Shown here: positions 2,880 to 55,902 of the stretch, piece by piece
Layout: every line of letters starts with the position of its first letter
Position numbering within the stretch: position 1 is the first letter of the stretch
DNA from: Laetmonice hystrix
Lineage: Eukaryota
Direction of reading: 5' to 3'
Assembly (NCBI GenBank): GCA_965235115.1
Contig: OZ249438.1
Coordinates: forward strand, 41,788,001-41,852,000
Length of the DNA stretch: 64,000 nucleotides
Program-made: the position numbers and the translations under genes
Notes under the pieces: model-generated
Databases searched by the model: none
Seen by the model: only the letters and a program-made list of their open reading frames with translations
What the model was told of the DNA's origin: nothing

Positions 2880-4559
2880 GTAATAGGCAAGGCCCTTAAA
2901 ACACGGTTATATCATTTTATCATCAACACTGCAGCAGCCTCCCTTTAAGAGGGTCAAATCAAAATGAAAGGTTAACAACTATCCCTCTAGTTGAATAAAT
3001 GAAAGTGAATTGCGTTTATTGGATGTCTTTAAGGGATTCACAATAAGCATGTTCTGAAGGTTTCCGCGAGTCAGAGCTAACCTCCGCTGCTCTGGCCTCG
3101 TTCTGGGCGCAGTGGCGGTGAACATGGCATATTTGTGCGAGTTTCACGCTTGATTCCACCACAAGATGTCGTTAGCCGTCGCCAGGATTGTGAGGGAAGT
3201 CGACAACATCCAGCAAAGAGGGCAACAAGGAGTATCTAAACACAGGCAGATTGCTGGATTCTTGTTATCCGGCAGTGCCAGCATGTATTGCTGCTATTGA
3301 CCGGCCGGGCCCACTTTGTAAGTGACTTGATATGAAGAGAGCCAGTTGTGCGCCGATAATAGGACGCTGATCAGACGCTGTCCCGGCGTCCTCATGACCA
3401 CGTTCACGGCCTCTGATTACGCCTGCTGGTGTCACATCCAATTTTGTCCCTCATATCATTTAGATCAGCCCAGATGATCTATGTACCGGATCCGCGCGAA
3501 AAGAAATCAATGAAATTGTGTTGTGGTAGAATTGGGCCCACTGTAAGGAGATCAAAGTGGGGGAAGGGATTTCAACCCGCCTTTACCAAGTGTCACAGAG
3601 ATATCACCCCCGTCTCCATGGATCCAGTAGGAATCGGTGTTACGATAACCTCTTGCAGGTCAATAGCTGCTAAATGTAATGGGAATGTGCCGATAAAGAG
3701 CATGATCTAGACAGCTCCATCCTCCACCAGGAAACAGTCAATGTGTGTATATTACTGTCGAATTTCTTTGCCAATTGCCTAACCTTGCTGCACACACGAC
3801 ACGATGGTTAGGTAAGGAAGGATCAAGCAGTACTCTGGAGGAAAATCACAACTATTCGATTGTATTTATAAGTAATCCATCACTAGGAAACCGTAATCAC
3901 CCAGATGTTGCCCGATGATAGTGATTCTCTCGGGCTTAGATATAAATTCAGATCAGCCTCAAACTTTCTCATACCAATCCGCCTCAGACTTTCTCACACA
4001 GATCAGCCTCAATTTTTCTCATACCGAACGTACAATTGCAAGCCACTACCATTAGACCCACCACGCGATTTCCGCGGTCCCAGCATATATGACGTAATGT
4101 AAGAAACATAGGTTTTAAAAAGGCAATGGCTGCTGCCAAAGTACTTTGGGCGGAAGACCACCAAAAGGCTATTGCCAAAGTACCAATCAAAATACAGTAT
4201 TTATACTTTGGCAGCAACAAGCCAGGGTAATTGCTGCCAAAGTACCAATGGGCGACTGGCTTACAAACTGCTTGTTGCCTGATCCTGCCAAAGTACTTTG
4301 GAAGCAAGAAACATGTATACGGTCAACTCGGGGTTGATGCATGTAACAAAGTACTGTGTCCGCATTATAAAGCCACGCGATTGTGCAGAAGACCGTGGGC
4401 TTCAGTATCAAACTTTGTCAGCAACTTTATCAGGAATTCTTGTTGCCCATGTGGACGAAGAACTTTGTCTGGAAGCGCTGTTACCAAAGTCTATGGGTAC
4501 ACATGCACTGAAGTGTGAAAAAGTTGTTAGGGGACGTTCAGACTATTACCGCGTTATAT

Positions 4560-4682
4560 CAGTGGCTGATCCGGGGGTAGGGAGTTAACCCCCTAGCCAA
4601 TTTTGTCTTTTTTCACCATTGAACGGTCTTAATTGTCCATGACTACTCCCCCGCCCCCTTCCTAAATCCCGCATTCGCCCTG
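4560..4682. mobile_element. Small MITE-like element with CAG(T)GGC..ATCC / ..GCCCTG-type ends
   Basis: Starts CAGTGGCTGATCCGGGGG, ends GCATTCGCCCTG, flanked by TAT on both sides. Similar termini occur at 16862-17115 and 61381-61515. Confidence 0.45.
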
Positions 4683-5269
4683 TATCAGTACGGTTTTTAA
4701 TACCAAAGTAGGCCTACTTTGACAGGAAAAAGTGTGATTAGGCCTATACTACAATTTCTAAGCATGACCTACTGTGCCAACGTCCTTTTTGTCTGGAAAC
4801 ATGAAATCTCTGGACCTGAGATTTAGTCTTGACTCACTTTTTCATGACACACAGGGACATTTTCGATGGCGAAGTACTTTGTCAGGTGACGCTGTCTTAA
4901 CATGACGTTTATTGACAGAATAAAGTCAGGAAGTCAAGTGGTACTATATTTTGAACATGAGCTTTATTGCCAACGACCCTTCACATTGGACATAGAGAAT
5001 TACAACTGTCGGTGTGGAGAAAATCTTAGGTGTAAAAGCAAAAGGTATACTCGTAGTTTGCTGACGTAATCAAGGTAATGTAGGCCTACTTATATACATG
5101 TAGGCCTATATAATTTGGAGATGCCAATTAACATGCAAAACTGTGTAACCCTGAAAAAAGCCTTTCAGAACTTCCTTCGCGAGTTACAGTAAAACAGCCT
5201 GCGGTAATTTGGCCTGAATCTGTATAGTAAGATGGAACACTTGGAAAAAGTGGACACCAGTGGCAACAG

Positions 5270-6073
5270 TAATTAGGTAATCGCAAAGCAGGCTAACCCC
5301 CTACCCCTTGCTGTCACAGTACTTTGGTAATAGCAAAACAGCCTAACCCCCTACCCCTTGCTGCCAGTGTACTTTGGTAATAGCAAAACAGCCTAACCCC
5401 CTACCCCTTGCTGCCACAGTACTTTGGTAATAGCAAAACAGCCTACCCCCCCTACCCCTTGCTGCCACAGTACCTTGGCAATAACAATGCAGCCTAACCC
5501 CTACCCCTTGCTGCACCATTACTTTGGCAATAACAATGCAGCCTAACGCCCTACCTCTTGCTGCCACAGTACCTTGGCAATAACAATGCAGCCTAACCCC
5601 CTACCCCTTGCTGCCACAGTACCTTGGCAATAACAATGCAGCCTAACCCCCTACCCCTTGCTGCACCATTACTTTGGCAATAACAATGCAGCCTAACGCC
5701 CTACCCCTTGCTGCCACAGTACCTTGGCAATAACAATGCAGTCTAACCCCCTACCCCTTGCTGCACCATTACTTTGGCAATAACAATGCAGCCTAGCGCC
5801 CTACCTCTTGCTGCCACAGTAACTTGGCAATAACAATGCAGCCTAACTCCCTACCCCTTGCTGCCACAGTGCTTTGGTAATAGCAAAGCAGCCTAACCCC
5901 CTACCCCTTGCTGCCACAGTACCTTGGCAATAACAATGCAGCCTAACCCCCTACCCCTTGCTGCCACAGTACCTTGGCAATAACAATGCAGCCTAACGCC
6001 CTACCCCTTGCTGCCACAGTACCTTGGCAATAACAATACAGCCTAACCCCCCGCCCCTTGCTGCCACGGTAAC
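5270..6073 (-). repeat. 50-bp tandem array (left arm), ~15-16 copies
   Basis: Unit GCAGCCTAACCCCCTACCCCTTGCTGCCACAGTACCTTGGCAATAACAAT, the reverse complement of the 6470-9064 unit. Confidence 0.97.
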
Positions 6074-6079
6074 AATTTG

Positions 6080-6220
6080 TTGACCGATGTTGTCAGCTTT
6101 GGTTTCCGTTGTCTAAGCTGTTCACATTGATAATGAAACCAGACATGACAATTGTCGCACTGGATTTCTTGGCGCGGCCAGATCTGATGCGGTGCAGTCC
6201 CTCGCTCCACAGTTATTTGA
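6080..6220 (-). pseudogene. Frameshifted PHD-finger (C4HC3) remnant
   Basis: The minus strand reads IQCDNCHVWFHYQCEQL (C-x2-C-x4-H-x2-C, PHD-typical WFH). The adjacent upstream sequence reads NNCGARDC in another frame. The last Cys pair is not intact. Confidence 0.55.
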
Positions 6221-6469
6221 ATGGTTTGGCCAAGAACTGCTGGTACGTATGTTGGCGGTAGTCTGGTACGTGGAGCTGCGTGAGTGATGGAGGTGGCACT
6301 CCTCTCACGAGTGCATCTGCATTCTGAATTTAAAAAAATGTCGACACTCATCAATAAATCAATTTTATTTTTATCAAATTGATCCGTCGCTTTGCCATAA
6401 ATGGTAAAGTTTATGGTTACAGTGCAAGTAATCAAAGAGTCTATCAATTTTAACTGATATGACAGATGG

Positions 6470-9064
6470 CAGATTACCAAGGTAATGTGAGAGCAAGGGG
6501 CAGGGCGTTAGGCTGTATTGTTATTGCCAAGATACTGTGGCAGCAAGGAGCAGAGGGTTACGCTGCATTGTTATTGCCAAAGTACTGTGGCAGCAAGGGG
6601 CAAGGCGTTAGGCTGCATAGTTATTGCCAAAGTACTGTGAGAGCAAGAGGCAGGGCGTTAGGCTGTATTGTTATTGCCAAGATACTGTGGCAGCAAGGAG
6701 CAGAGGGTTACGCTGCATTGTTATTGCCAAAGTACTGTGGCAGCAAGGGGCAAGGCGTTAGGCTGCATAGTTATTGCCAAAGTACTGTGAGAGCAAGAGG
6801 CAGGGCGTTAGGCTGTATTGTTATTGCCAAGATACTGTGGCAGCAAGGAGCAGAGGGTTACGCTGCATTGTTATTGCCAAAGTACTGTGGCAGCAAGGGG
6901 CAAGGCGTTAGGCTGCATAGTTATTGCCAAAGTACTGTGGCAGCAAGCGGCAGAGGGTTACGCTGCATTGTTATTGCCAAAGTACTGTGGCAGCAAGGGG
7001 CATGGGGTTAGGCTGCATTGTTATTGCCAAAATAACTGTGGCAGCAAGGGGTAGGGGGTTAGGCTGCATTGTTATTGCCAAGGTACTGTGGCAGCAAGAG
7101 GTAGGGGGTTAAGCTGCATTGTTATTGGCAAAGCAATGTGGTAGCAAGAGGTAGTGGGTTAGGCTGCATTGTTATTGCCAAGGTACTGTGGCAGCAAGGG
7201 GTAGGGGGTTAGGCTGCATTGTTATTGCCAAAGCAATGTGGTAGCAAAAGGTAGGGGTTTAGGCTGCATTGTTATTGCCAAAGTACTGTGGCAGCAAGGG
7301 GCATGGGATTAGGCTGCATTGTTATTGCCAAAGTACTGTGGCAGCAAGGAGCAGGGCGTTACGCTGCATTGTTATTGCCAAAGTACTGTGGCAGCAAGGG
7401 GCATGGGATTAGGCTGCATTGTTATTGCCAAAGTACTGTGGCAGCAAGGAGCAGGGCGTTAGGCTGCATGGTTATTGCCAAAGTAACTGTGGCAGCAAGG
7501 GGTAGGGGGTTATGCCGCACTGTTATTGCCAAAGTACTGTGGCAGCAAGGGGTAGGGCTTAAGGCAGCATTGTTATTGCCAAAGTACTGTGGCAGCAAGG
7601 GGCAAGGCGTTAGGCTGCATGGTTATTGCCAAAGTACTGTGGCAGCAAGGGGCAGGGGGTTAGGCTGTATTGTTATTGCCAAAGTAACTGTGGCAGCAAG
7701 GGGTAGGGGGTTAGGCTGCATTGTTTTTGCCAAGGTACTGTGGCAGCAAGGGTTAGGGGGTTAGGCCGCATTTTTATTACCAAATTACTGTGGCAGCAAG
7801 GGGTAGGGCTTAAGGCTGCATGGTTATTGCCAAAGTACTGTGGCAGCACGGGGCAGGGGGTTAGGCTGTATTGTTATTGCCAAAGTAACTGTGGCAGCAA
7901 GGGGTAGGGGGTTAGGCTGCATTGTTATTGCCAAGGTACTGTGGCAGCAAGGGTTAGGGGGTTAGGCCGCATTGTTATTACCAAAGTACTGTGGCAGCAA
8001 GGGGTAGGGCTTAAGGCTGCATTGTTATTGCCAAAGTACTGTGGCAGCAAGGGGCAGGGGGTTAGGCTGTATTGTTATTGCCAAAGTAACTGTGGCAGCA
8101 AGGGGTAGGGGGGTTAGGCTGCATTGTTATTGCCAAGGTACTGCGGCAGCAAGGGGTAGGGGGTTAGGCTGCATTGTTATTGCCAAAGCAATGTGGTAGC
8201 AAGAGGTAGGGGTTTAGGCTGCATTGTTATTGCCAAAGTACTGTGGCAGCAAGGGGCATGGGGTTAGGCTGCATTGTTATTGCCAAAGTACTGTGGCAGC
8301 AAGGAGCAGGGCGTTAGGCTGCATGGTTATTGCCAAAGTAACTGTGGCAGCAAGGGGTAGGGGGTTAGGCTGCATTGTTATTGCCAAAGTACTGTGGCAG
8401 CAAGGGGTAGGGCTTAAGGCAGCATTGTTATTGCCAAAGTACTGTGGCAGCAAGGGGCAAGGCGTTAGGCTGCATGGTTATTGCCAAAGTACTGTGGCAG
8501 CAAGGGGCAGGGGGTTAGGCTGTATTGTTATTGCCAAAATAACTTTGGCAGCAAGGGGTAGGGGGTTAGGCTGCATTGTTATTGCCAAGGTACTGAGGCA
8601 GCAAGGGTTAGGGGGTTAGGCCGCTTTTTTATTACCAAAGTACTGTGGCAGCAAGGGGTAGGGCTTAAGGCTGCATGGTTATTGCCAAAGTACTGTGGCA
8701 GCACGGGGCAGGGGGTTAGGCTGTATTGTTATTGCCAAAGTAACTGTGGCAGCAAGGGGTAGGGGGTTAGGCTGCATTGTTATGGCCAAGGTACTGTGGC
8801 AGCAAGGGGTAGGGCGTTAGGCTGCATTGTTATTGCCAAAGTAATGTGGTAGCAAGAGGTAGGGGGTTAGGCTGCATTGTTATTGCCAAAGTACTGTGGC
8901 AGCAAGGGGCATGGGGTTAGGCTGCATTGTTATTGCCAAAGTACTGTGGCAGCAAGGGGCAGGGCGTTAGGCTGCATTGTTATTGCCAAAGTACTGTGGC
9001 AGCAAGGGGTAGGGGGTTAGGCTGCATTGTTATTGCCAAAGTACTGTGGCAGCAAGGGGTAGGG
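6470..9064 (+). repeat. 50-bp tandem array (right arm), ~50 copies
   Basis: Unit ATTGTTATTGCCAAAGTACTGTGGCAGCAAGGGGTAGGGGGTTAGGCTGC. The first ~450 bp form three near-identical 150-bp trimers. Confidence 0.98.
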
Positions 9065-9516
9065 CGTATCATAATCACATCTGTAATAGTTAAGATCTGG
9101 CCTTGTTACACCCCTGTAACAATTATGGCAAAATGATTTTAACTTCTCTCTGAGTTACCGTTAATCATGTCAAATAATGTAGAAATGAACTAACCTTATC
9201 CCCTCTGGGATCCGTATGTCTTGTCTTCCTGGATGTTTTTATAGATACGTCTTCACAGTTTCTGAGGCGTATATGTGATAAACAACATTCTGACCCTGCT
9301 TGTACTGGTCAAATTCCTCAAAAAGCTATGGTCCGTCGGAAACGTCTCACCCAGCTTCATTATAGCGGGACTATTCAAGATGGCACCTCCTGGTCCTAGT
9401 CTTGGCGCCAAAAAATCTAGGTCATATGTAACAAAGCTTCTGATTGGGACTTTGACAATAGCGTTTTGGTCGTCTTCCACCCAAAGTACTTTGGCAGTAG
9501 ACACTCCGTTTTAAAA

Positions 9517-10297
9517 ATGGCGTCATTTTGTAGCTGTCTGCACTGAAAACGCGACCAAAAACATGTTTTTTAAGCGATTCTGGCACTTTTTTCACTCAGG
9601 CCTGGTCGCCAAGATTTTGCATATGAAATAACAATACCTCCCTTCTCTTCCTGGCAAAACACCAGGTGGCGGCCATGGTTACGACCTTGACCTTTAGTGT
9701 CGGCCGGGAAGCGCTAACAGTAATTTTTGTTGACAAAAGTGTTCTGTCTGTCTGTTGTCATGTATGCAGCTAAACCGGCTGATGAAGACGAGTTGTTAAT
9801 GCTAATAAACAAAGCTTATTGTTCTGACAAATGTTCATCCAGTTGTGATAATAATCCACTTGGATATGGATCTGGGTAGTCGGTTCAAGGCAGATCAGTT
9901 CACTGCATGCACTGTACCAGTCTTTTACATTCATTGAATAAAGCTGATTCACGCGAACTTTGACCTTTTCTGACCTTATGTAGTAAAGGTCAGGCTATGG
10001 GGTCACTTGGTCGGAACGCTGGAAATGGGATACACTCTGAAACTTACAATCTATGGGTTTGATTTATCACAAACACCTCCTTATCTCCTGGCCATGTCCT
10101 TACACTGCAAAAACTGTACCTTAGCCACTGAGATCATTAATTGACCTTTGACCTCCGTCATTAACATAATTTATGCAGATATTCTGCTAAAACCTGTTTT
10201 AACGTAAACCATAGGTCCTCTACATGCAAAAACTGGTATTAACCCAAAATTGATTTTCTAGCATGGAACCACCCTTTTTGCATGGTGGGTCACATAT
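9517..10297. mobile_element. Probable DNA-transposon terminal segment (TGACCTT-rich), ending GGTGGGTCACATAT
   Basis: Repeated TGACCTT(T)GAC motifs and a terminus-like end. No coding capacity; family not identified. Confidence 0.3.
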
Positions 10298-12212
10298 AGT
10301 GTATATTGCATGAAGGGTGCTTACTCGAGTGCTTCATGCCCTAATAATAGGCTGAGACTTTATTTAAGGCGTGAAAGACAATGCAGAGCGATACTAGGGA
10401 ATGGAATCTATCTGGTACGTTACCACACTGCTGTATATAAGCATAGTCTTTTATAGGGCCGCTAGACTAGACAGCTACTGCTCATTCCAAAAGATATTCA
10501 CACAGACATGATAGACAAATTGTCTGACAGATGTTTACATGGACATCAGTGTGTACTTTCTATGTCAATATGAAATACACGTAATAATGAATCTTCCCTC
10601 ATCCAAGGATGTAACGCGTGTCGACACTAATGAGTTTCTAATGAGGTCGAAAACATGCTAGGAATATTACATAGAGAGTTGTGAAAAAACACGAAGGAAT
10701 AGGCATATCAATCGGGGACCCTGCTACAGCCAAAGAGACCTTCCAGGAAAGGCGACCATTATAATTGGTGACCCTAGTTATGAAAGGTCATATTGTCTAT
10801 AGGATTATATTTCCCGAAACACAGTAGGCCACGACCCAAACTCTGTGTGATGCCTGTGGTCAACATAAAAGGTGAAACGCCAACATTTTGTAAGCCATCA
10901 CATAACTATAGAAGATGAAGTAAGTTCAGGTATACGGAACGGCACAGACTATACTCCCCCTGTTGTGACGTATAAAATAGAGCATTAATAAGACGTTGAT
11001 TGTGAAGGGAAACATTGCATGCCAGACTGAAAGACCTTCCATCAGTTTGACGTCAGTTCAGATATCATCATAGGTCTGAGCGATACCTGTCTTCTTTTGT
11101 CAAATATATACAGGATGTGCGCACGCACGGCATCCTGGGAGTGTCTCGAGAAACCTGAAGATATCACTGGCCACGCCTGTCGCCAATGGTAACAAGTATA
11201 TATGATGTCTCCTTTCCGTTTAGGTGCGGCATGAGGGAGTCTTTGTGTGTAAAAGAGTTGCTTGCATGACATCCGGTGCCGATTCCGATTACCACGCCGT
11301 CTAGTGGACGGTACTGGCGTCACTTTCAGGCCCCTTTATGAACTTGGCATGCTCTGACTTTGAATGATAGTTCTTGGCTCCGGTTCGCTCGGAATCCGCC
11401 TCCTGGGGGACCGGCAGGTGACAAAAGATCCATTGGTTGGCTCTGGCCAGGTGGAATTAGCTCTTGGGGAGCTGTAGCGGCTTATTGGAGCCAGACCAAG
11501 GCGGCGCTTATAGGTGGCGCGAGCAGAATTACGAACGCTGACTGGGGTGAGGGTGATCCAGGACTCGCTGCGTCCAAAGGCTTCTCTAGGAACATAATTC
11601 GATCTGCTCTATGGACTTCACAAATCAAAGCTACACGGCAGAGTTTCTGGACCTCTGCCTGGAAGAATACTCGGTTACTCTGGTTCAATAGTGTCTTGAC
11701 AACAGAAAGTTTCCTCAACACATACCGGTCCTTCTATAACGAACGGAATGTCAGATTGAAGTACCTTAAAATCCGTTAAAATACGGAGAAACACTCAAGG
11801 CATAATGCCTTCCATCTTTATTTAAGAGTGATTCCATTTTTTACTTCCCCACCTTTCATTGATAAGACTAACGGCCAAATAACCCCAGAATGTCACACAA
11901 AGCCTGTTCCCTGTGGCAGGCCTGGAACGTGATGAGAAGATTGGTAGACAGCGCATCCGCTGTCCTGATGTGTCTCCCTCGCTTCCCTTCTAACAAGGAC
12001 TGCCGTGTTTACAGGACTTTGTAATGTTTTATGTAACGCTACTTTTACTCCGTATTTAATGGGTAAATTACAATGTGCGTGAGGGGAGTTCTCTTTCAGA
12101 ACTGATCTTGTAGTCCATAGATTCTGGTCAATTAAAACTTTACGGCGCTTTGATTATACTTTATTCAGCAACCTGTAACCCTTCCTTCACCATTTAACTC
12201 CTGAATTATTTC

Positions 12213-12816
12213 TTTACGAAACTATCCCGTCTTGGACCGACCAGACATAGCTGGAGTGACTGTTGGAACCTATTTACGAAACTATCCTGTCTCGGACCGA
12301 CCAGACATAGCTGGAGTGACTGTTGGAACCTATTTACGAAACTATCCCGTCTCGGACCGACCAGACATAGCTGGAGTGACTGTTGGAACCTATTTACGAA
12401 ACTATCCCGTCTCGGACCGACCAGACATAGCTGGAGTGACTGTTGGAACCTATTTACGAAACTATCCTGTCTCGGACCGACCAGACATAGCTGGAGTGAC
12501 TGTTGGAACCTATTTACGAAACTATCCTGTCTCGGACCTACCAGACATAGCTGGAGTGACTGTTGGAACCTATTTACGAAACTATCCCGTCTCGGACCGA
12601 CCAGACATAGCTGGAGTGACTGTTGGAACCTATTTACGAAACTATCCCATCTCGGTCCGACCAGACATAGCTGGAGTGACTGTTAGAACCTATTTACGAA
12701 ACTATCCCGTCTCGAACCGACCAGACATAGCTGGAGTTGCTGTTGGAACCTATTTACGAAACTATCCTGTCTCGGACCGACCAGACATAGCTGGAGTGAC
12801 TGTTGGAACCTATTTA
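12213..12816. repeat. 60-bp tandem array, ~10 copies
   Basis: Unit TATTTACGAAACTATCCCGTCTCGGACCGACCAGACATAGCTGGAGTGACTGTTGGAACC; very homogeneous. Confidence 0.98.
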
Positions 12817-52640: not shown

Positions 52641-52917
52641 ACATCTGCAGCTATGTTTGGAGATGGTGGCAGTACAACGTTCAGGTAATTCGCTACAGAA
52701 ACACCTTCAACACATTATTTGTGTTGGAAATGAATTTCATTTGTATAAAAAAAAGATGAACAGTATCGAATTAATCATTTTGAGCAACAAATTTGTGTGA
52801 ACAAATTGATATGTAAGTTTTGAAAGGATGCCGATATAGAATGCATCTTCAATTTTATAATTTTCTATTTAAAGATAGTAGCATATCCGATACTAATATG
52901 TTTTGGTTCCCTTACAG

Positions 52918-55902
52918 CAAAGACCAATAAAGCAGTCGTTTTGCGGGTCGTTACGGCGGGACACACACTGGAAATGCCTGATCCTCAGCCTGCTGATCTG
53001 TGGTTGTCTGGCCGCCATCGCCTGGTGCCGCCTCACCGTCGTCACAAGAGATGTTATCAACTTCTATGAGATGCCTATTACCCAGACGGCCTATGTGTCC
53101 CCGTGTGACGACGGCTACATCTACATCCCAGTGGCCTTTGTTGTTATGTTGTACCTCGTGTACCTGGTCGAGTGCTGGCACAGTCACACCCGGATTGAGC
53201 TCCAGTATAAGGTAGACGTTAACAGTGTCTATGATAGAATCCACGCCATGCGTGAGGCGCTTCCCATCGTCTGGTGGAAGTCGGTGTGTTATCATTACGT
53301 CAGAAGGACGCGACAAGTGACGCGATATCGTAACGGCGACGCCTTTACCACAACACAGGTTTACTATGAAAGGGTCAACTCACACACGGCAAGCTCTGCC
53401 TTTAACTTCAGCCACTGCGGCATCAAGGACATATCCAAGAACCTTGTGAATTTAGATGGATACCCTGCCACCAAAATAAAATTTAGTAAAGGTTTCTCAT
53501 TTGCGACAGTAGAAGCCGAGAATGAATTTGAAGACCAGAGAGCTCAGTTTTTCCATGAGCATGAGAGACGAGATGATTACATGGAAACACGCGAGGGATT
53601 AGATCTGCTGAATGTGAATTTCAAGGAGTACATGATTGCATTTGCCGACCCGGACAACCTTCCTTGGTATGTGTCTCATATTGTATTTTGGGTGGCCTCT
53701 CTGCTGATGCTTTCCTGGCCACTACGTGTGTGTATAGAATTCAAAACTGCTTACGTGCACTACCATGTCCATAAGTTGTTTGGGTGTAATTATCTGGATC
53801 CTTCCTACTGCCCAGGCACCATGTCGAGGGTGAGTACTATGGGCAGCTCCGAGTTGGAGATGAATATCAGGAATAACTACACTCTGGTGCCAAGCTATTC
53901 AGAGGCCCTGTTGATGGAGAATTGCTACACCCAGCAGCAGGCCCGGGACCCGAGTGGTAGTGTTACTCCCAGTAGTATTGGAAATGGCATCCTCCCCGGA
54001 GTGGGTGTCAACGGAGCCATCCCTAACGGTGTTGCCATAGCAATTCCCAACGGACATCTCTCCTTGGCCAACGGCGGTGTTCATATCTCAAACGGGCATG
54101 CTGGAATTGCCAATGGTCATGTTCAAAACGGCATTATTCCTAATGTTGCCATGGTGCATAACGGCCATGTGGGTTACCATAACGGCCATATTCCTAACGG
54201 AGGCGTTCCGGTTATTTTGAACCTAAGGACTAACGTTCGAGAAGACGACGACCGCGCTGACCTGGAGTCGAGACGCCGACGCCGGCGTCGTAAGAACAAA
54301 CGCCGGTTCCAGCGTCAACCTGCAGACAACACTCAGAGTGACAGTGACGGAGGTATTGACGGCACGGATTGCACAGTCCGTCATGGACCGAGGAGTCATA
54401 CTCCGACCTTGGCCACCACGCCGGAGTCACCAGAGAGTCAGGTAGACATCATCCTGGAGTACGAGGAGGCGGAGACCATTGAGGCGGCCTCCGAGTCCCC
54501 TGACTCGGACGATGCTGACGGTGGTGACGCCCCGGCCACCCCGGACAGTCTCAACCCTTCTCCCGGCGAGGACGAGGACATGCCTCGTACCCCAGAAAGT
54601 CTGGACCCTCCTCCTGGGGAGGACGAGGACATGTCCCGTACCCCAGAAAGCCTGGACCCTCCTCCTGGGGAGGATAACATTACGGCCCTGGGTACACAAG
54701 AAGTTCTAAACTCCTCATCACAAGTTAACATGACAACCCTGGACGCTGCCGAGACGCTGAGCCTTTCACCCGGTGTCAGTGACAATGATCGACATGTACC
54801 GGAAACCCCTAAACTGTCTCCACAGGAAAACCCGTACCCTTCACCGGGTGAAAGCGCTGACCCTCTGGATACCCCGGAAACACTAAACCCTTTACCCCTG
54901 GCAGACGGGGGTGAAGACGGAGACCCTCCAGTGTCCAGAGGGACGTGCACCACCTCTCAACAATCGCTCTCGCCTGACGGGGTCGCAGAAGGCAGTGCCG
55001 TTTCTGACACCGTTTCACACACGCCCTGTCCAAGCACCTTTGACGAGGCGCCGCGTTTCCCGAGGAAAAATAGCCAAGAACAGTCTTCGCCGTCACCTGA
55101 CTCAACGCGGAGTTTGATTGAGGCATCGTCAGGCCGCCGGTGCCAGGCTAGACTGCCTCAGTCGTACAGTACACCACTCCGGACGGCTGATATAGAGTCG
55201 TCCAGGTTCTCCTTGCCGCACAGTTCTACGGGTGACCTCCCACCGGTCCACAGGGCCGCCAGGTGTACGTCTCACCGGCGGAGTTCAGCCCCGTGTTACC
55301 GGCCATCTCATCCCTGCCACACGTCCTCCTCCTCCGGTTCGGATAACACACGTCCCTGCCAACGTACGGTACACTGCCCACACTCCCGGGGACCTGTCTC
55401 TCCTACCCGCCGGTCTCCGCCCTCACAGTCAGTCTCCCCCCGGCACACTCCCTCCCCGCACGGTTCTCCACGGAGAACGTGTACCTCCGCCCCGGGAGGT
55501 CCTTGCTCACGCCACCTTCCCTCCCCTCACTCGTCCCCCCGGAGAACCCCACCCTCGCACTCCGGCAGCACGCCCTGCCAGTCCCCGTCCCCTCATCGAT
55601 CCCCACTGAGGACCCCCTCGGCACACACGTCCCCCAGACATACCCAGTCATCCATCACCTCCTCATCCTCCCCACTCACCACCCCATCCCCACACTCCTC
55701 CCCGCGCCGGGCTCCACCTCATCCTCCTCCAGAGGTGCCACCTCCAGCATACGAGGAGGCCCTCACCATGCGCGTCGTCCAGGAGGGCTCTCCAGTACCC
55801 ACCTCCCCTCTCAACCTCAACGACGAACTAACCGAACTCTCTGAGTCCCCACGCACCGCCAGACGGCGCTACACTCTGCGCTGTATGGAAACCTCCTTAT
55901 AG
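52918..55902 (+). CDS. TMEM151: TMEM151-family membrane protein, main coding exon (994 codons + stop)
   Basis: The translation carries recognisable TMEM151A/B motifs: QRPIKQS..HWKCL, SPCDDGYIYIP, YLVECWH, WWKSVCYHYVRRTRQVTRYRNGDAFTTTQVYYER, LSWPLR, KLFG, PSYSEA. The frame is open for ~3 kb to TAG at 55900-55902. It is preceded by branch-like TACTAAT (52891-52897), a pyrimidine tract and CAG (52915-52917), so the exon starts at 52918 in phase 0. The A versus B paralogue cannot be assigned. Confidence 0.95.
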   Translation, partial: QRPIKQSFCGSLRRDTHWKCLILSLLICGCLAAIAWCRLTVVTRDVINFYEMPITQTAYVSPCDDGYIYIPVAFVVMLYLVYLVECWHSHTRIELQYKVDVNSVYDRIHAMREALPIVWWKSVCYHYVRRTRQVTRYRNGDAFTTTQVYYERVNSHTASSAFNFSHCGIKDISKNLVNLDGYPATKIKFSKGFSFATVEAENEFEDQRAQFFHEHERRDDYMETREGLDLLNVNFKEYMIAFADPDNLPWYVSHIVFWVASLLMLSWPLRVCIEFKTAYVHYHVHKLFGCNYLDPSYCPGTMSRVSTMGSSELEMNIRNNYTLVPSYSEALLMENCYTQQQARDPSGSVTPSSIGNGILPGVGVNGAIPNGVAIAIPNGHLSLANGGVHISNGHAGIANGHVQNGIIPNVAMVHNGHVGYHNGHIPNGGVPVILNLRTNVREDDDRADLESRRRRRRRKNKRRFQRQPADNTQSDSDGGIDGTDCTVRHGPRSHTPTLATTPESPESQVDIILEYEEAETIEAASESPDSDDADGGDAPATPDSLNPSPGEDEDMPRTPESLDPPPGEDEDMSRTPESLDPPPGEDNITALGTQEVLNSSSQVNMTTLDAAETLSLSPGVSDNDRHVPETPKLSPQENPYPSPGESADPLDTPETLNPLPLADGGEDGDPPVSRGTCTTSQQSLSPDGVAEGSAVSDTVSHTPCPSTFDEAPRFPRKNSQEQSSPSPDSTRSLIEASSGRRCQARLPQSYSTPLRTADIESSRFSLPHSSTGDLPPVHRAARCTSHRRSSAPCYRPSHPCHTSSSSGSDNTRPCQRTVHCPHSRGPVSPTRRSPPSQSVSPRHTPSPHGSPRRTCTSAPGGPCSRHLPSPHSSPRRTPPSHSGSTPCQSPSPHRSPLRTPSAHTSPRHTQSSITSSSSPLTTPSPHSSPRRAPPHPPPEVPPPAYEEALTMRVVQEGSPVPTSPLNLNDELTELSESPRTARRRYTLRCMETSL

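What the first reader, a model, noticed from the sequence alone, without database searches (positions are those of the whole stretch)
4113..9516. 5.4-kb foldback-like element whose arms are opposing satellite arrays built from its own terminal motif
Seen: ~79-bp inverted termini (4113-4191 / 9439-9516, ~85% identical by hand). Between them are two arrays of one 50-bp unit in opposite orientation (5270-6073 and 6470-9064) around a ~400-bp loop. The palindrome CCAAAGTACTTTGG lies in both termini, degenerate GCCAAAGTAC copies are scattered over 4200-4890, and the satellite core is TTATTGCCAAAGTACTGTGG. Both ends fall on TTTTAAAA. Established: Drosophila FB, Galileo and Tetris are TIR elements with long, internally repetitive arms, and Tetris has been linked to satellite origin. 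Inference: this is a non-autonomous foldback transposon whose subterminal transposase-binding repeats amplified into satellite arms, possibly an undescribed family and a snapshot of TE-to-satellite conversion.
Basis: partly seen in the sequence, partly recalled or inferred. Interest (0 to 1): 0.75.

Follow-up and report, generated by a model that had tools for sequence, protein, structure and literature searches.

The report
Non-coding foldback transposon, satellite arms
This is a real, recently mobile but non-coding "foldback" jumping gene, one of about 120 copies in this genome, whose two inverted arms are built of a 50-bp tandem repeat. It is a well-documented new family of a known kind, not a new mechanism.

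Summary
The element is window 4122-9508 (5,387 bp). The "TTTTAAAA" at both ends is a 9-bp target-site duplication (TTTTAAAAA), not part of the inverted ends. Nine uninterrupted copies of the ~850-bp repeat it landed in show one TTTTAAAAA at that site.

The layout is end repeat, 1.06 kb, C-rich 50-bp array, 0.4-kb loop, G-rich array, 0.37 kb, end repeat. It recurs in 14 of 17 other copies examined; two more lack only the loop and one could not be read to its left end. The genome holds 122 left and 125 right ends, against 0 for the control pattern. This is therefore a family design, not a mis-assembly.

- **Copies:** they differ by 2-4% and insert into strictly A/T-rich 9-10-bp sites.
- **Arms:** each arm carries its own monomer variant, shared across copies, so the arrays travelled with the element.
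- **Array length:** it varies from 4 to 50 monomers. The window's right arm is the longest array of this satellite found in the genome, enlarged by very recent block duplications.
- **Free-standing satellite:** none was found.
- **Transposase:** no copy encodes one. The loop holds only a truncated PHD-finger fragment.

The best fit is a non-autonomous Mutator-type (Rehavkus/Foldback/Tetris-like) element. The superfamily rests on inference, because no autonomous partner was found. This scan had already found two other foldback families in the same genome.

The parts
4113..4121 (.). Left copy of the 9-bp target-site duplication, TTTTAAAAA
   Evidence: The same 9-mer lies at 9509-9517. Nine paralogues of the host repeat carry it once, with the two flanks contiguous.
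4122..4200 (+). Left end repeat. It starts GGCAATGG, holds the 14-bp palindrome CCAAAGTACTTTGG at 4136-4149, and has a second GCCAAAGTAC at 4174.
   Evidence: It is 100% identical in most of the 30 genomic copies shown. There are 122 matches to its first 29 bases with up to 2 mismatches, 95 of them exact, against 0 for the control. It is about 86% complementary to 9438-9508.
4201..5262 (+). Left subterminal unique region of 1.06 kb. It has further motif copies at 4203, 4236, 4287, 4293, 4874 and 5204, and no ORF of note.
   Evidence: It is present, next to the left end repeat, in 16 of the 17 other copies examined. Mean pairwise substitution distance among 15 aligned copies is 2.2%. Motif positions are and ORFs.
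5263..6073 (-). Left arm: the 50-bp satellite in C-rich orientation, about 16 monomers. Its arm-specific variant has CCAAGGTAC and GGGGTAGGGGG.
   Evidence: Tandem Repeats Finder places it at 5284-6071. The arm consensus is shared by the left arms of most copies.
6074..6472 (.). Central loop or middle domain, 399 bp and unique
   Evidence: There are 85 or more genomic matches at 93-99% identity, always between the two arrays. It is flipped in copy L036 and absent in L038 and L039.
6094..6171 (-). Truncated PHD-finger-like coding fragment inside the loop (IQCDNCHVWFHYQC)
   Evidence: Pfam PF00628 gives E 1.4e-5 and 25.5 bits, above the 24-bit cut-off, over profile positions 12-37 of 47. Other copies give E about 6e-6 to 1e-5 and reach positions 4-36. 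The frame is broken in many copies and no open frame exceeds 195 aa.
6473..9067 (+). Right arm: the same 50-bp satellite in G-rich orientation, about 52 monomers. Its arm-specific variant has CCAAAGTAC and GGGGCAGGGGG. It contains recent multi-monomer duplications.
   Evidence: Tandem Repeats Finder places it at 6473-9064. It is the longest array of this satellite found in the genome. Blocks are 99.7% identical at a 150-bp lag, 98.7% at 855 bp and 98% at 201 bp.
9068..9437 (+). Right subterminal unique region, 370 bp
   Evidence: It is 95-99% identical in other copies and always lies next to the right end repeat.
9438..9508 (-). Right end repeat. Its reverse complement starts CGGAGTG and holds the same 14-bp palindrome.
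   Evidence: There are 125 matches to its terminal 29 bases with up to 2 mismatches, against 0 for the control.
9509..9517 (.). Right copy of the 9-bp target-site duplication, TTTTAAAAA

Best explanation
Window 4122-9508 is one copy of a young family of about 120 non-autonomous cut-and-paste DNA transposons of the foldback type.

**Structure.** Each copy has imperfect 75-80-bp end repeats that carry a 14-bp palindrome (CCAAAGTACTTTGG). Inside these are unique subterminal segments. Further in are two inverted arms built of a 50-bp tandem repeat, each unit of which holds a near-copy of that palindrome. A 0.4-kb loop sits in the middle.

**Shown.** Insertion duplicates 9 bp of a strictly A/T-rich target.

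**Inferred.**
- A transposase supplied from elsewhere in the genome binds the palindrome-bearing motifs at the ends and, probably, in the arrays.
- That transposase is most likely of the Mutator type, from the Rehavkus/Foldback lineage.
- The element is a deletion derivative that kept only a truncated PHD-finger fragment of a coding region in its loop.

**After insertion.** The arrays expand and contract by unequal exchange or slippage; the window's right arm grew to 2.6 kb this way. Recombination between the inverted arms can flip or delete the loop.

**Confidence.** I put about 0.95 on the element being a mobile, non-autonomous foldback transposon with 9-bp duplications, and about 0.65 on the Mutator-type assignment. 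The figure given is for the whole statement.
For: **Mobility**
- Fourteen of 16 full copies with both ends, the window's included, carry exact 9-bp target-site duplications of different sequence; two are imperfect.
- Nine paralogous empty sites of the host repeat show a single TTTTAAAAA and contiguous flanks.
- Logan contigs join 4111 to 9508 with 10 shared letters.
- Positions -10 to -1 next to the left end are 90-100% A/T in 39 distinct flanks, against 41-67% further out.

**Family and layout**
- There are 122 left and 125 right ends.
- Fourteen of 17 other copies examined have the full layout; two lack only the loop and one could not be read to its left end. Lengths of the fetched copies run from 2.1 to 5.4 kb.
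- Copies differ by 2-4% in substitutions, and the end repeats by about 1%.

**Arrays belong to the element**
- Arm-specific monomer variants are shared across copies.
- Monomer number ranges from 4 to 50.
- The unit matches the terminal motif at 18 of 19 bases.
- A 1.2-kb sub-segment folds as a near-perfect hairpin, -394.6 kcal/mol.

**Non-autonomous**
- No ORF of note lies in the subterminal regions.
- No open frame through any loop exceeds 195 aa.

**Mutator-type reading**
- The features are a 9-bp target-site duplication, long repeat-filled arms, a terminal palindrome, and a PHD fragment in the loop.
- Rehavkus elements are described with a 9-bp duplication, a PHD finger, and minisatellites or tandem repeats in their inverted termini, in arthropods and annelids (PMC6446971; 10.1101/2024.12.02.626372).
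- Muta1 has 8-9-bp duplications, a terminal palindrome and subterminal tandem repeats (PMC5225508).
- Tetris was assigned to Mutator on the same grounds (PMC4079207).
- ORFs combining PHD and MULE domains exist in this genome.
Against: - No autonomous copy with these ends was found, so the superfamily is inferred from the duplication length and the architecture alone.
- The PHD+MULE ORFs in the genome are not near any family copy.
- The palindrome is not enriched outside the family: 9 sites, against 20 for the control pattern.
- The PHD match is short and partial. A search of 1.84 billion proteins returned only generic multi-PHD proteins.
- The Merlin superfamily also makes 8-9-bp duplications (from my own knowledge).
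- Only short Logan contigs were available, so no single molecule spans this copy.
Confidence: 0.75

Rival explanations
1. It is the same kind of non-autonomous foldback element, but it is mobilised by a transposase of another superfamily that gives 8-9-bp duplications (Merlin, or a hAT- or P-like enzyme as for Galileo).
For: No transposase is linked to the family. Foldback architecture has arisen in more than one superfamily, as argued by Marzo et al. 2008, cited in PMC4079207.
Against: The duplication is consistently 9 bp. From my own knowledge, hAT and P give 8 bp and Galileo gives 7 bp. Long arms filled with subterminal repeats plus a terminal palindrome are typical of animal Mutator-type elements (PMC5225508) and of Rehavkus (PMC6446971).
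Confidence: 0.15
2. One reading: the arms record an ongoing conversion of transposase-binding repeats into a free satellite.
For: The unit carries the terminal motif. Arrays vary from 4 to 50 monomers, and the window's arm shows very recent block duplications. Such conversions are documented for Tetris and for Rehavkus in Tribolium (PMC4079207; 10.1101/2024.12.02.626372).
Against: The longest array of this satellite found in the genome is 2.6 kb. Nearly all the best array hits that I could place by coordinates lie inside family copies; one 1.5-kb array at C4:22862166 could not be placed. Arm-specific variants shared among copies show that the arrays predate the spread of the family.
Confidence: 0.1
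3. The loop's PHD fragment is a captured piece of a host gene, as in Pack-MULEs, rather than a relic of the element's own transposase.
For: About 20% of Muta1 derivatives carry host gene fragments (PMC5225508). The fragment resembles ordinary chromatin-reader PHD fingers.
Against: No parent gene with close similarity exists in this genome: every hit below E 1e-3 lies in a family loop. Rehavkus transposases and local Mutator-type ORFs themselves carry PHD fingers (PMC6446971).
Confidence: 0.3
4. The inverted arrays are an assembly artefact, or a one-off local inverted duplication.
For: No long read spanning the copy was available; only short contigs could be laid on it.
Against: The same order of parts, with the same junction sequences, recurs at 14 independent loci on many chromosomes, each with its own target-site duplication.
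Confidence: 0.02

Closest known systems
Rehavkus elements (Mutator-related; Repbase Rehavkus-1_TC and Rehavkus-1_HR; described in PMC6446971 and 10.1101/2024.12.02.626372)
   Same: Both have a 9-bp target-site duplication and long inverted termini carrying a variable number of tandem (satellite-like) repeats. A PHD finger is associated with the coding part. Known hosts include annelids, and earlier notes of this scan call this genome an annelid (not tested here).
   Different: No transposase is present or linked here, and only a truncated PHD-like fragment remains. The unit is 50 bp, against about 164 bp in Rehavkus-1_TC. Homology to Rehavkus could not be tested, because no reference sequences were available.
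Tetris, the foldback element of Drosophila virilis (PMC4079207)
   Same: Both have a flanking domain, a tandem-repeat domain, an inner part and a non-coding middle domain. In both, the repeat unit shares a stretch with the terminal domain. Tetris has 8-10-bp duplications, no autonomous copy was found, and it was assigned to Mutator by its duplication length.
   Different: Tetris has about 220-bp units, only three complete copies, and free kilobase-size satellite arrays. Here there are about 120 largely intact copies and no free arrays were found.
Muta1 and other Aedes aegypti Mutator-type elements, "type 2 foldback" (PMC5225508)
   Same: Both have 8-9-bp duplications, a terminal palindromic motif, subterminal tandem repeats, and hundreds of non-autonomous derivatives with varying repeat number.
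   Different: Muta1 repeats are 12-15 bp within 145-bp end repeats, and an autonomous copy is known and active. Here the arrays are 0.1-2.6 kb of 50-bp units and lie inside a 0.4-1.1-kb unique segment.
Drosophila FB and Galileo; sea-urchin TU elements (from my own knowledge)
   Same: They share long, internally repetitive inverted arms around a middle segment. FB gives 9-bp duplications.
   Different: Galileo belongs to the P superfamily and gives 7-bp duplications, which does not fit here. FB arms are repetitive right up to the termini, whereas here unique sequence separates the end repeat from the array.

Membership tests
Foldback-type transposable elements (a structural class) | Long inverted arms made wholly or partly of tandem repeats, around a middle domain | tested here: met
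   Arrays at 5284-6071 and 6473-9064 lie in opposite orientation around a 399-bp loop. The same layout is seen in 14 of 17 other copies.
Foldback-type transposable elements (a structural class) | Mobile: multiple dispersed copies with target-site duplications and empty sites | tested here: met
   There are 122 and 125 ends, 9-bp duplications and paralogous empty sites.
Mutator / MULE superfamily, including Rehavkus | Target-site duplication of about 9 bp (8-11) | tested here: met
   Exact 9-bp duplications in 14 of 16 complete copies, the window's included
Mutator / MULE superfamily, including Rehavkus | An autonomous member with the same ends that encodes a Mutator-type DDE transposase | tested here: inconclusive
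   PF10551 hits exist in the genome. None lies within or near a family copy, and their flanks could not be fetched. No long ORF occurs in any loop.
Rehavkus | Tandem repeats or minisatellites in the inverted or subterminal regions | tested here: met
   The feature is as described in PMC6446971 and 10.1101/2024.12.02.626372.
Rehavkus | PHD finger in the transposase | tested here: inconclusive
   Only a truncated PHD-like fragment is present in the loop (PF00628, E 6e-6 to 1.4e-5). It is not part of any transposase ORF, and the large protein search found only generic PHD proteins.
Rehavkus | Sequence homology to Rehavkus transposases or consensus sequences | not testable with these tools
piggyBac / Kolobok / Sola (TTAA-target elements, suggested by the TTTTAAAA ends) | A 4-bp TTAA target-site duplication | tested here: not met
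   Duplications are 9 bp and vary in sequence, for example TTAATAAAA, TTTATATAA and TTAACAAAT.
Galileo (P superfamily foldback) | A 7-bp target-site duplication and a P-type transposase | tested here: not met
   The duplication is 9 bp. No transposase was found.

The most novel reading that the evidence does not exclude
The family may be maintained without any autonomous partner that shares its ends. A resident PHD-bearing Mutator-type transposase with unrelated end repeats would recognise only the 14-bp palindrome. The 50-bp arrays would then act as a multi-site landing pad that decides which copies are mobilised. The inverted arms would also make the loop an invertible segment and a source of hairpin RNA.
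Probability: 0.12. Interest if true: 0.5.

Novelty: new member of a known kind. Interest (0 to 1): 0.3.

Why it matters
It provides a clean, many-copy example of a foldback transposon with satellite-built arms outside insects. It has exact borders, a sharply A/T-specific 9-bp target, arm-specific repeat variants and direct signs of arm-to-arm recombination (a flipped loop and lost loops). Such elements seed dispersed short satellite arrays and can cause inversions. They also form hairpins that trouble assembly and replication, so annotating the family helps in reading this repeat-rich genome. It does not reveal a new mechanism.

Tried and rejected
- **Copies with only the left end.** I looked for an autonomous copy among loci that keep only the left end. 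L034 carries a 6.1-kb non-coding nested insert. L049 carries a Gypsy-type LTR retrotransposon. L050 and L051 are truncated and their ORFs match no family.
- **Loop peptide against this genome.** Only family loops were hit, and no open frame exceeds 195 aa.
- **Loop peptide against 1.84 billion proteins.** Two generic multi-PHD proteins were found.
- **Mutator-type and PHD hits by coordinate.** PHD+MULE ORFs exist, but none lies near a family copy.
- **Palindrome outside the family context.** There is no enrichment.
- **Rfam scan of the element.** No match.
- **Reads.** Only short Logan contigs from one sample were available, so there is no long-read or RNA evidence. The "empty-site" joint comes from paralogues of the host repeat, so it does not show that this insertion is polymorphic.
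- **TTAA-type target.** Rejected.
Full report
**1. Observation**

- Tandem Repeats Finder reports a 50-bp array at 5284-6071 (15.8 copies) and another at 6473-9064 (51.7 copies). Their consensus units are reverse complements of each other.
- The repeat finder pairs the two arrays as inverted arms of up to 554 nt, at 85-93% complementarity, around a 399-bp spacer.
- The two termini align at about 86% over roughly 80 bp.
- The 10-mer GCCAAAGTAC occurs 31 times in the 64-kb window, against 0.11 expected, and every occurrence lies in the element. With one mismatch allowed, 105 of 108 hits lie inside it. None falls in the loop or in the right subterminal segment.
- A 1.2-kb sub-segment (400 bp of each arm plus the loop) folds as an almost uninterrupted hairpin, -394.6 kcal/mol.

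**2. Exact borders and proof of insertion**

The window belongs to a 627-Mb assembly of 35 contigs. Thirty other genomic copies of the left end all begin at GGCAATGG, preceded by unrelated A/T-rich sequence.

Sixteen full copies could be read at both ends: the window's and 15 of the 17 others fetched. Fourteen of these, the window's included, carry exact 9-bp direct duplications of differing sequence. Two carry imperfect ones. Of the remaining two fetched copies, L034 was fetched short of its right end, which one search places at C30:4285352. L045 lacks its left part.

At the window copy the duplication is TTTTAAAAA (4113-4121 and 9509-9517).

The element sits 67 bp inside another repeat of about 850 bp, which has 17 copies. 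Nine of those paralogues run straight through the insertion point with a single TTTTAAAAA. They serve as paralogous empty sites. The element is therefore 4122-9508, or 5,387 bp.

Logan contigs of the one available sample also join 4111 to 9508 with 10 shared letters. Their depth is about ten times that of the unique flank. I therefore attribute that joint to the host-repeat paralogues, not to an empty allele of this locus.

The target is sharply A/T-specific. Positions -10 to -1 are 90-100% A/T in 39 distinct left flanks, against 41-67% further out.

**3. A family, not a one-off**

- The first 29 bases of the left end occur 122 times with up to 2 mismatches, 95 of them exact. The first 29 of the right end occur 125 times. 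The reversed control pattern gives 0 in both searches.
- The loop has 85 or more matches at 93-99% identity.
- I fetched 17 other copies. Fourteen show the full order of parts: left end repeat, 1.06-kb left segment, C-rich array, loop, G-rich array, 0.37-kb right segment, right end repeat.
- Two copies (L038, L039) have the arrays abutting, with no loop. L045 could not be read to its left end.
- Pairing the end coordinates by hand gives lengths of about 1.0-6.5 kb, mostly 3.3-4.6 kb. Two pairs of about 10 kb also occur. One (L034) holds a nested insert and the other holds two loop hits.
- An assembly artefact at this locus cannot explain a layout repeated on many chromosomes, each time with its own target-site duplication.
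- Substitution distances among 15 aligned copies average 2.2% (left segment), 3.9% (loop), 2.7% (right segment) and about 1% (end repeats). The family is young.

**4. The arrays belong to the element**

Per-arm consensus monomers differ at two diagnostic positions. Left arms have CCAAGGTAC and GGGGTAGGGGG. Right arms have CCAAAGTAC and GGGGCAGGGGG. This holds across most independent copies. The two arms therefore already existed, and had already diverged, in the ancestor that spread.

Monomer number varies from 4 to 50 per arm. The window's right arm is the longest array of this satellite found in the genome. Nearly all the other top hits that I could place by coordinates lie inside family copies. 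One 1.5-kb array at C4:22862166 could not be placed. I found no free-standing satellite.

Within the window's right arm, blocks of three monomers are 99.7% identical at a 150-bp lag. Further blocks are 98-98.7% identical at lags of 201 and 855 bp, while neighbouring monomers differ by 10-20%. The arm grew by recent multi-monomer duplications.

The unit matches the terminal motif context (TGCTGCCAAAGTACTTTGG) at 18 of 19 bases, in the same orientation as the adjacent end repeat. This fits an origin of the unit from the terminal or subterminal binding motif, as proposed for Tetris (PMC4079207).

**5. Rearrangements driven by the arms**

- In L036 the loop is inverted relative to the flanks, and the arm-specific variants are swapped. 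This is the expected product of recombination between the inverted arrays.
- L044 has an extra inverted block inside one arm.
- L038 and L039 have lost the loop.

**6. Coding capacity**

- No ORF of note lies in either subterminal segment.
- The minus strand of the loop encodes a PHD-finger-like fragment (IQCDNCHVWFHYQC). It scores above Pfam's cut-off in the window copy (E 1.4e-5) and in three other copies (E about 6e-6 to 1e-5, reaching profile positions 4-36 of 47).
- The fragment is truncated by the array. Its reading frame is broken in many copies, and no open frame through any loop exceeds 195 aa.
- A search of 1.84 billion representative proteins found only two generic multi-PHD proteins.
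- The family is therefore non-autonomous. The fragment is a relic, either of a PHD-bearing transposase or of a captured gene.

**7. Which transposase?**

This was not resolved.
- The genome has Mutator-type (PF10551) hits. Several lie about 1.1-1.4 kb downstream of a PHD hit on the same strand, and two such pairs share one 677-aa open frame. PHD+MULE transposases therefore exist here.
- None of these is close to a family copy.
- The perfect palindrome is not enriched outside the family.
- The assignment to the Mutator/Rehavkus/Foldback lineage therefore rests on four things: the constant 9-bp duplication, the terminal palindrome, the repeat-filled inverted arms, and the PHD relic.
- The published descriptions match these features. 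Rehavkus has a 9-bp duplication, a PHD finger, and minisatellites or tandem repeats in its inverted termini, with arthropod and annelid hosts (PMC6446971; 10.1101/2024.12.02.626372; PMC10218199). Muta1 has 8-9-bp duplications, a terminal palindrome and subterminal repeats (PMC5225508). Tetris was assigned to Mutator in the same way (PMC4079207).
- The preprint 10.1101/2024.12.02.626372 attributes to Liu and Wessler (2017) the finding that more subterminal repeats raise the excision frequency. I did not check the original for that point.

**8. Verdict**

"Non-autonomous foldback transposon" is right. The TTAA-like end and the "satellite in the making" ideas are not. This is a new family of a known kind, and the scan has already reported two other foldback families in the same genome (s1-317215 and s1-319923, with 167-175-bp units). 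Earlier notes call the organism an annelid; I did not test that. There was no long-read or RNA evidence, and Repbase and Dfam could not be searched.

Noticed in passing
window 4055-4121 + 9518-10299: The foldback element is inserted 67 bp inside another dispersed repeat of about 850 bp. That repeat has 17 genomic copies at 89-99% identity, and its type was not determined.
   Followed up: partly
window 1-64000: The window is packed with unrelated minisatellite arrays with units of 18-80 bp, often 0.5-1.8 kb long. Examples lie at 12213, 15177, 17475, 21280, 30011, 35608, 40804, 48395 and 58682 (41 rows from Tandem Repeats Finder).
   Followed up: no
L036 (G000:C8:24576928-24580418): In this family copy the loop is inverted relative to the flanks and the arm-specific monomer variants are swapped. 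This is evidence for recombination between the inverted arms.
   Followed up: yes
L038, L039, L044: L038 and L039 are family copies without a loop, with the arrays abutting. L044 has an extra inverted block inside one arm.
   Followed up: partly
L049:458-8586 (G000:C21): A Gypsy-type LTR retrotransposon with open gag (354 aa) and pol (1,361 aa) frames is nested in the left segment of a family copy. An overlap at left-segment positions 137-144 suggests a target-site duplication of its own. Described only.
   Followed up: partly
G000:C4:31935233-31935322: Two family copies lie end to end, only 32 bp apart: the left end of one and the right end of the other. This matches the 9508-to-4122 joint seen in the contigs.
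   Followed up: no
G000:C1:33429713-33431122 and C4:8274430-8275839: Two 677-aa open frames score identically and carry a PHD finger about 370 aa upstream of a MULE domain. Similar PHD+MULE pairs lie on C5, C11, C2 and C3. They are possible sources of transposase, but could not be fetched.
   Followed up: partly
window 52903-55902 (+): A 999-aa open frame has a full TMEM151-family domain at its start (E 6e-165).
   Followed up: no
window 3952-4025: A 25-bp unit repeated three times lies just upstream of the host repeat.
   Followed up: no
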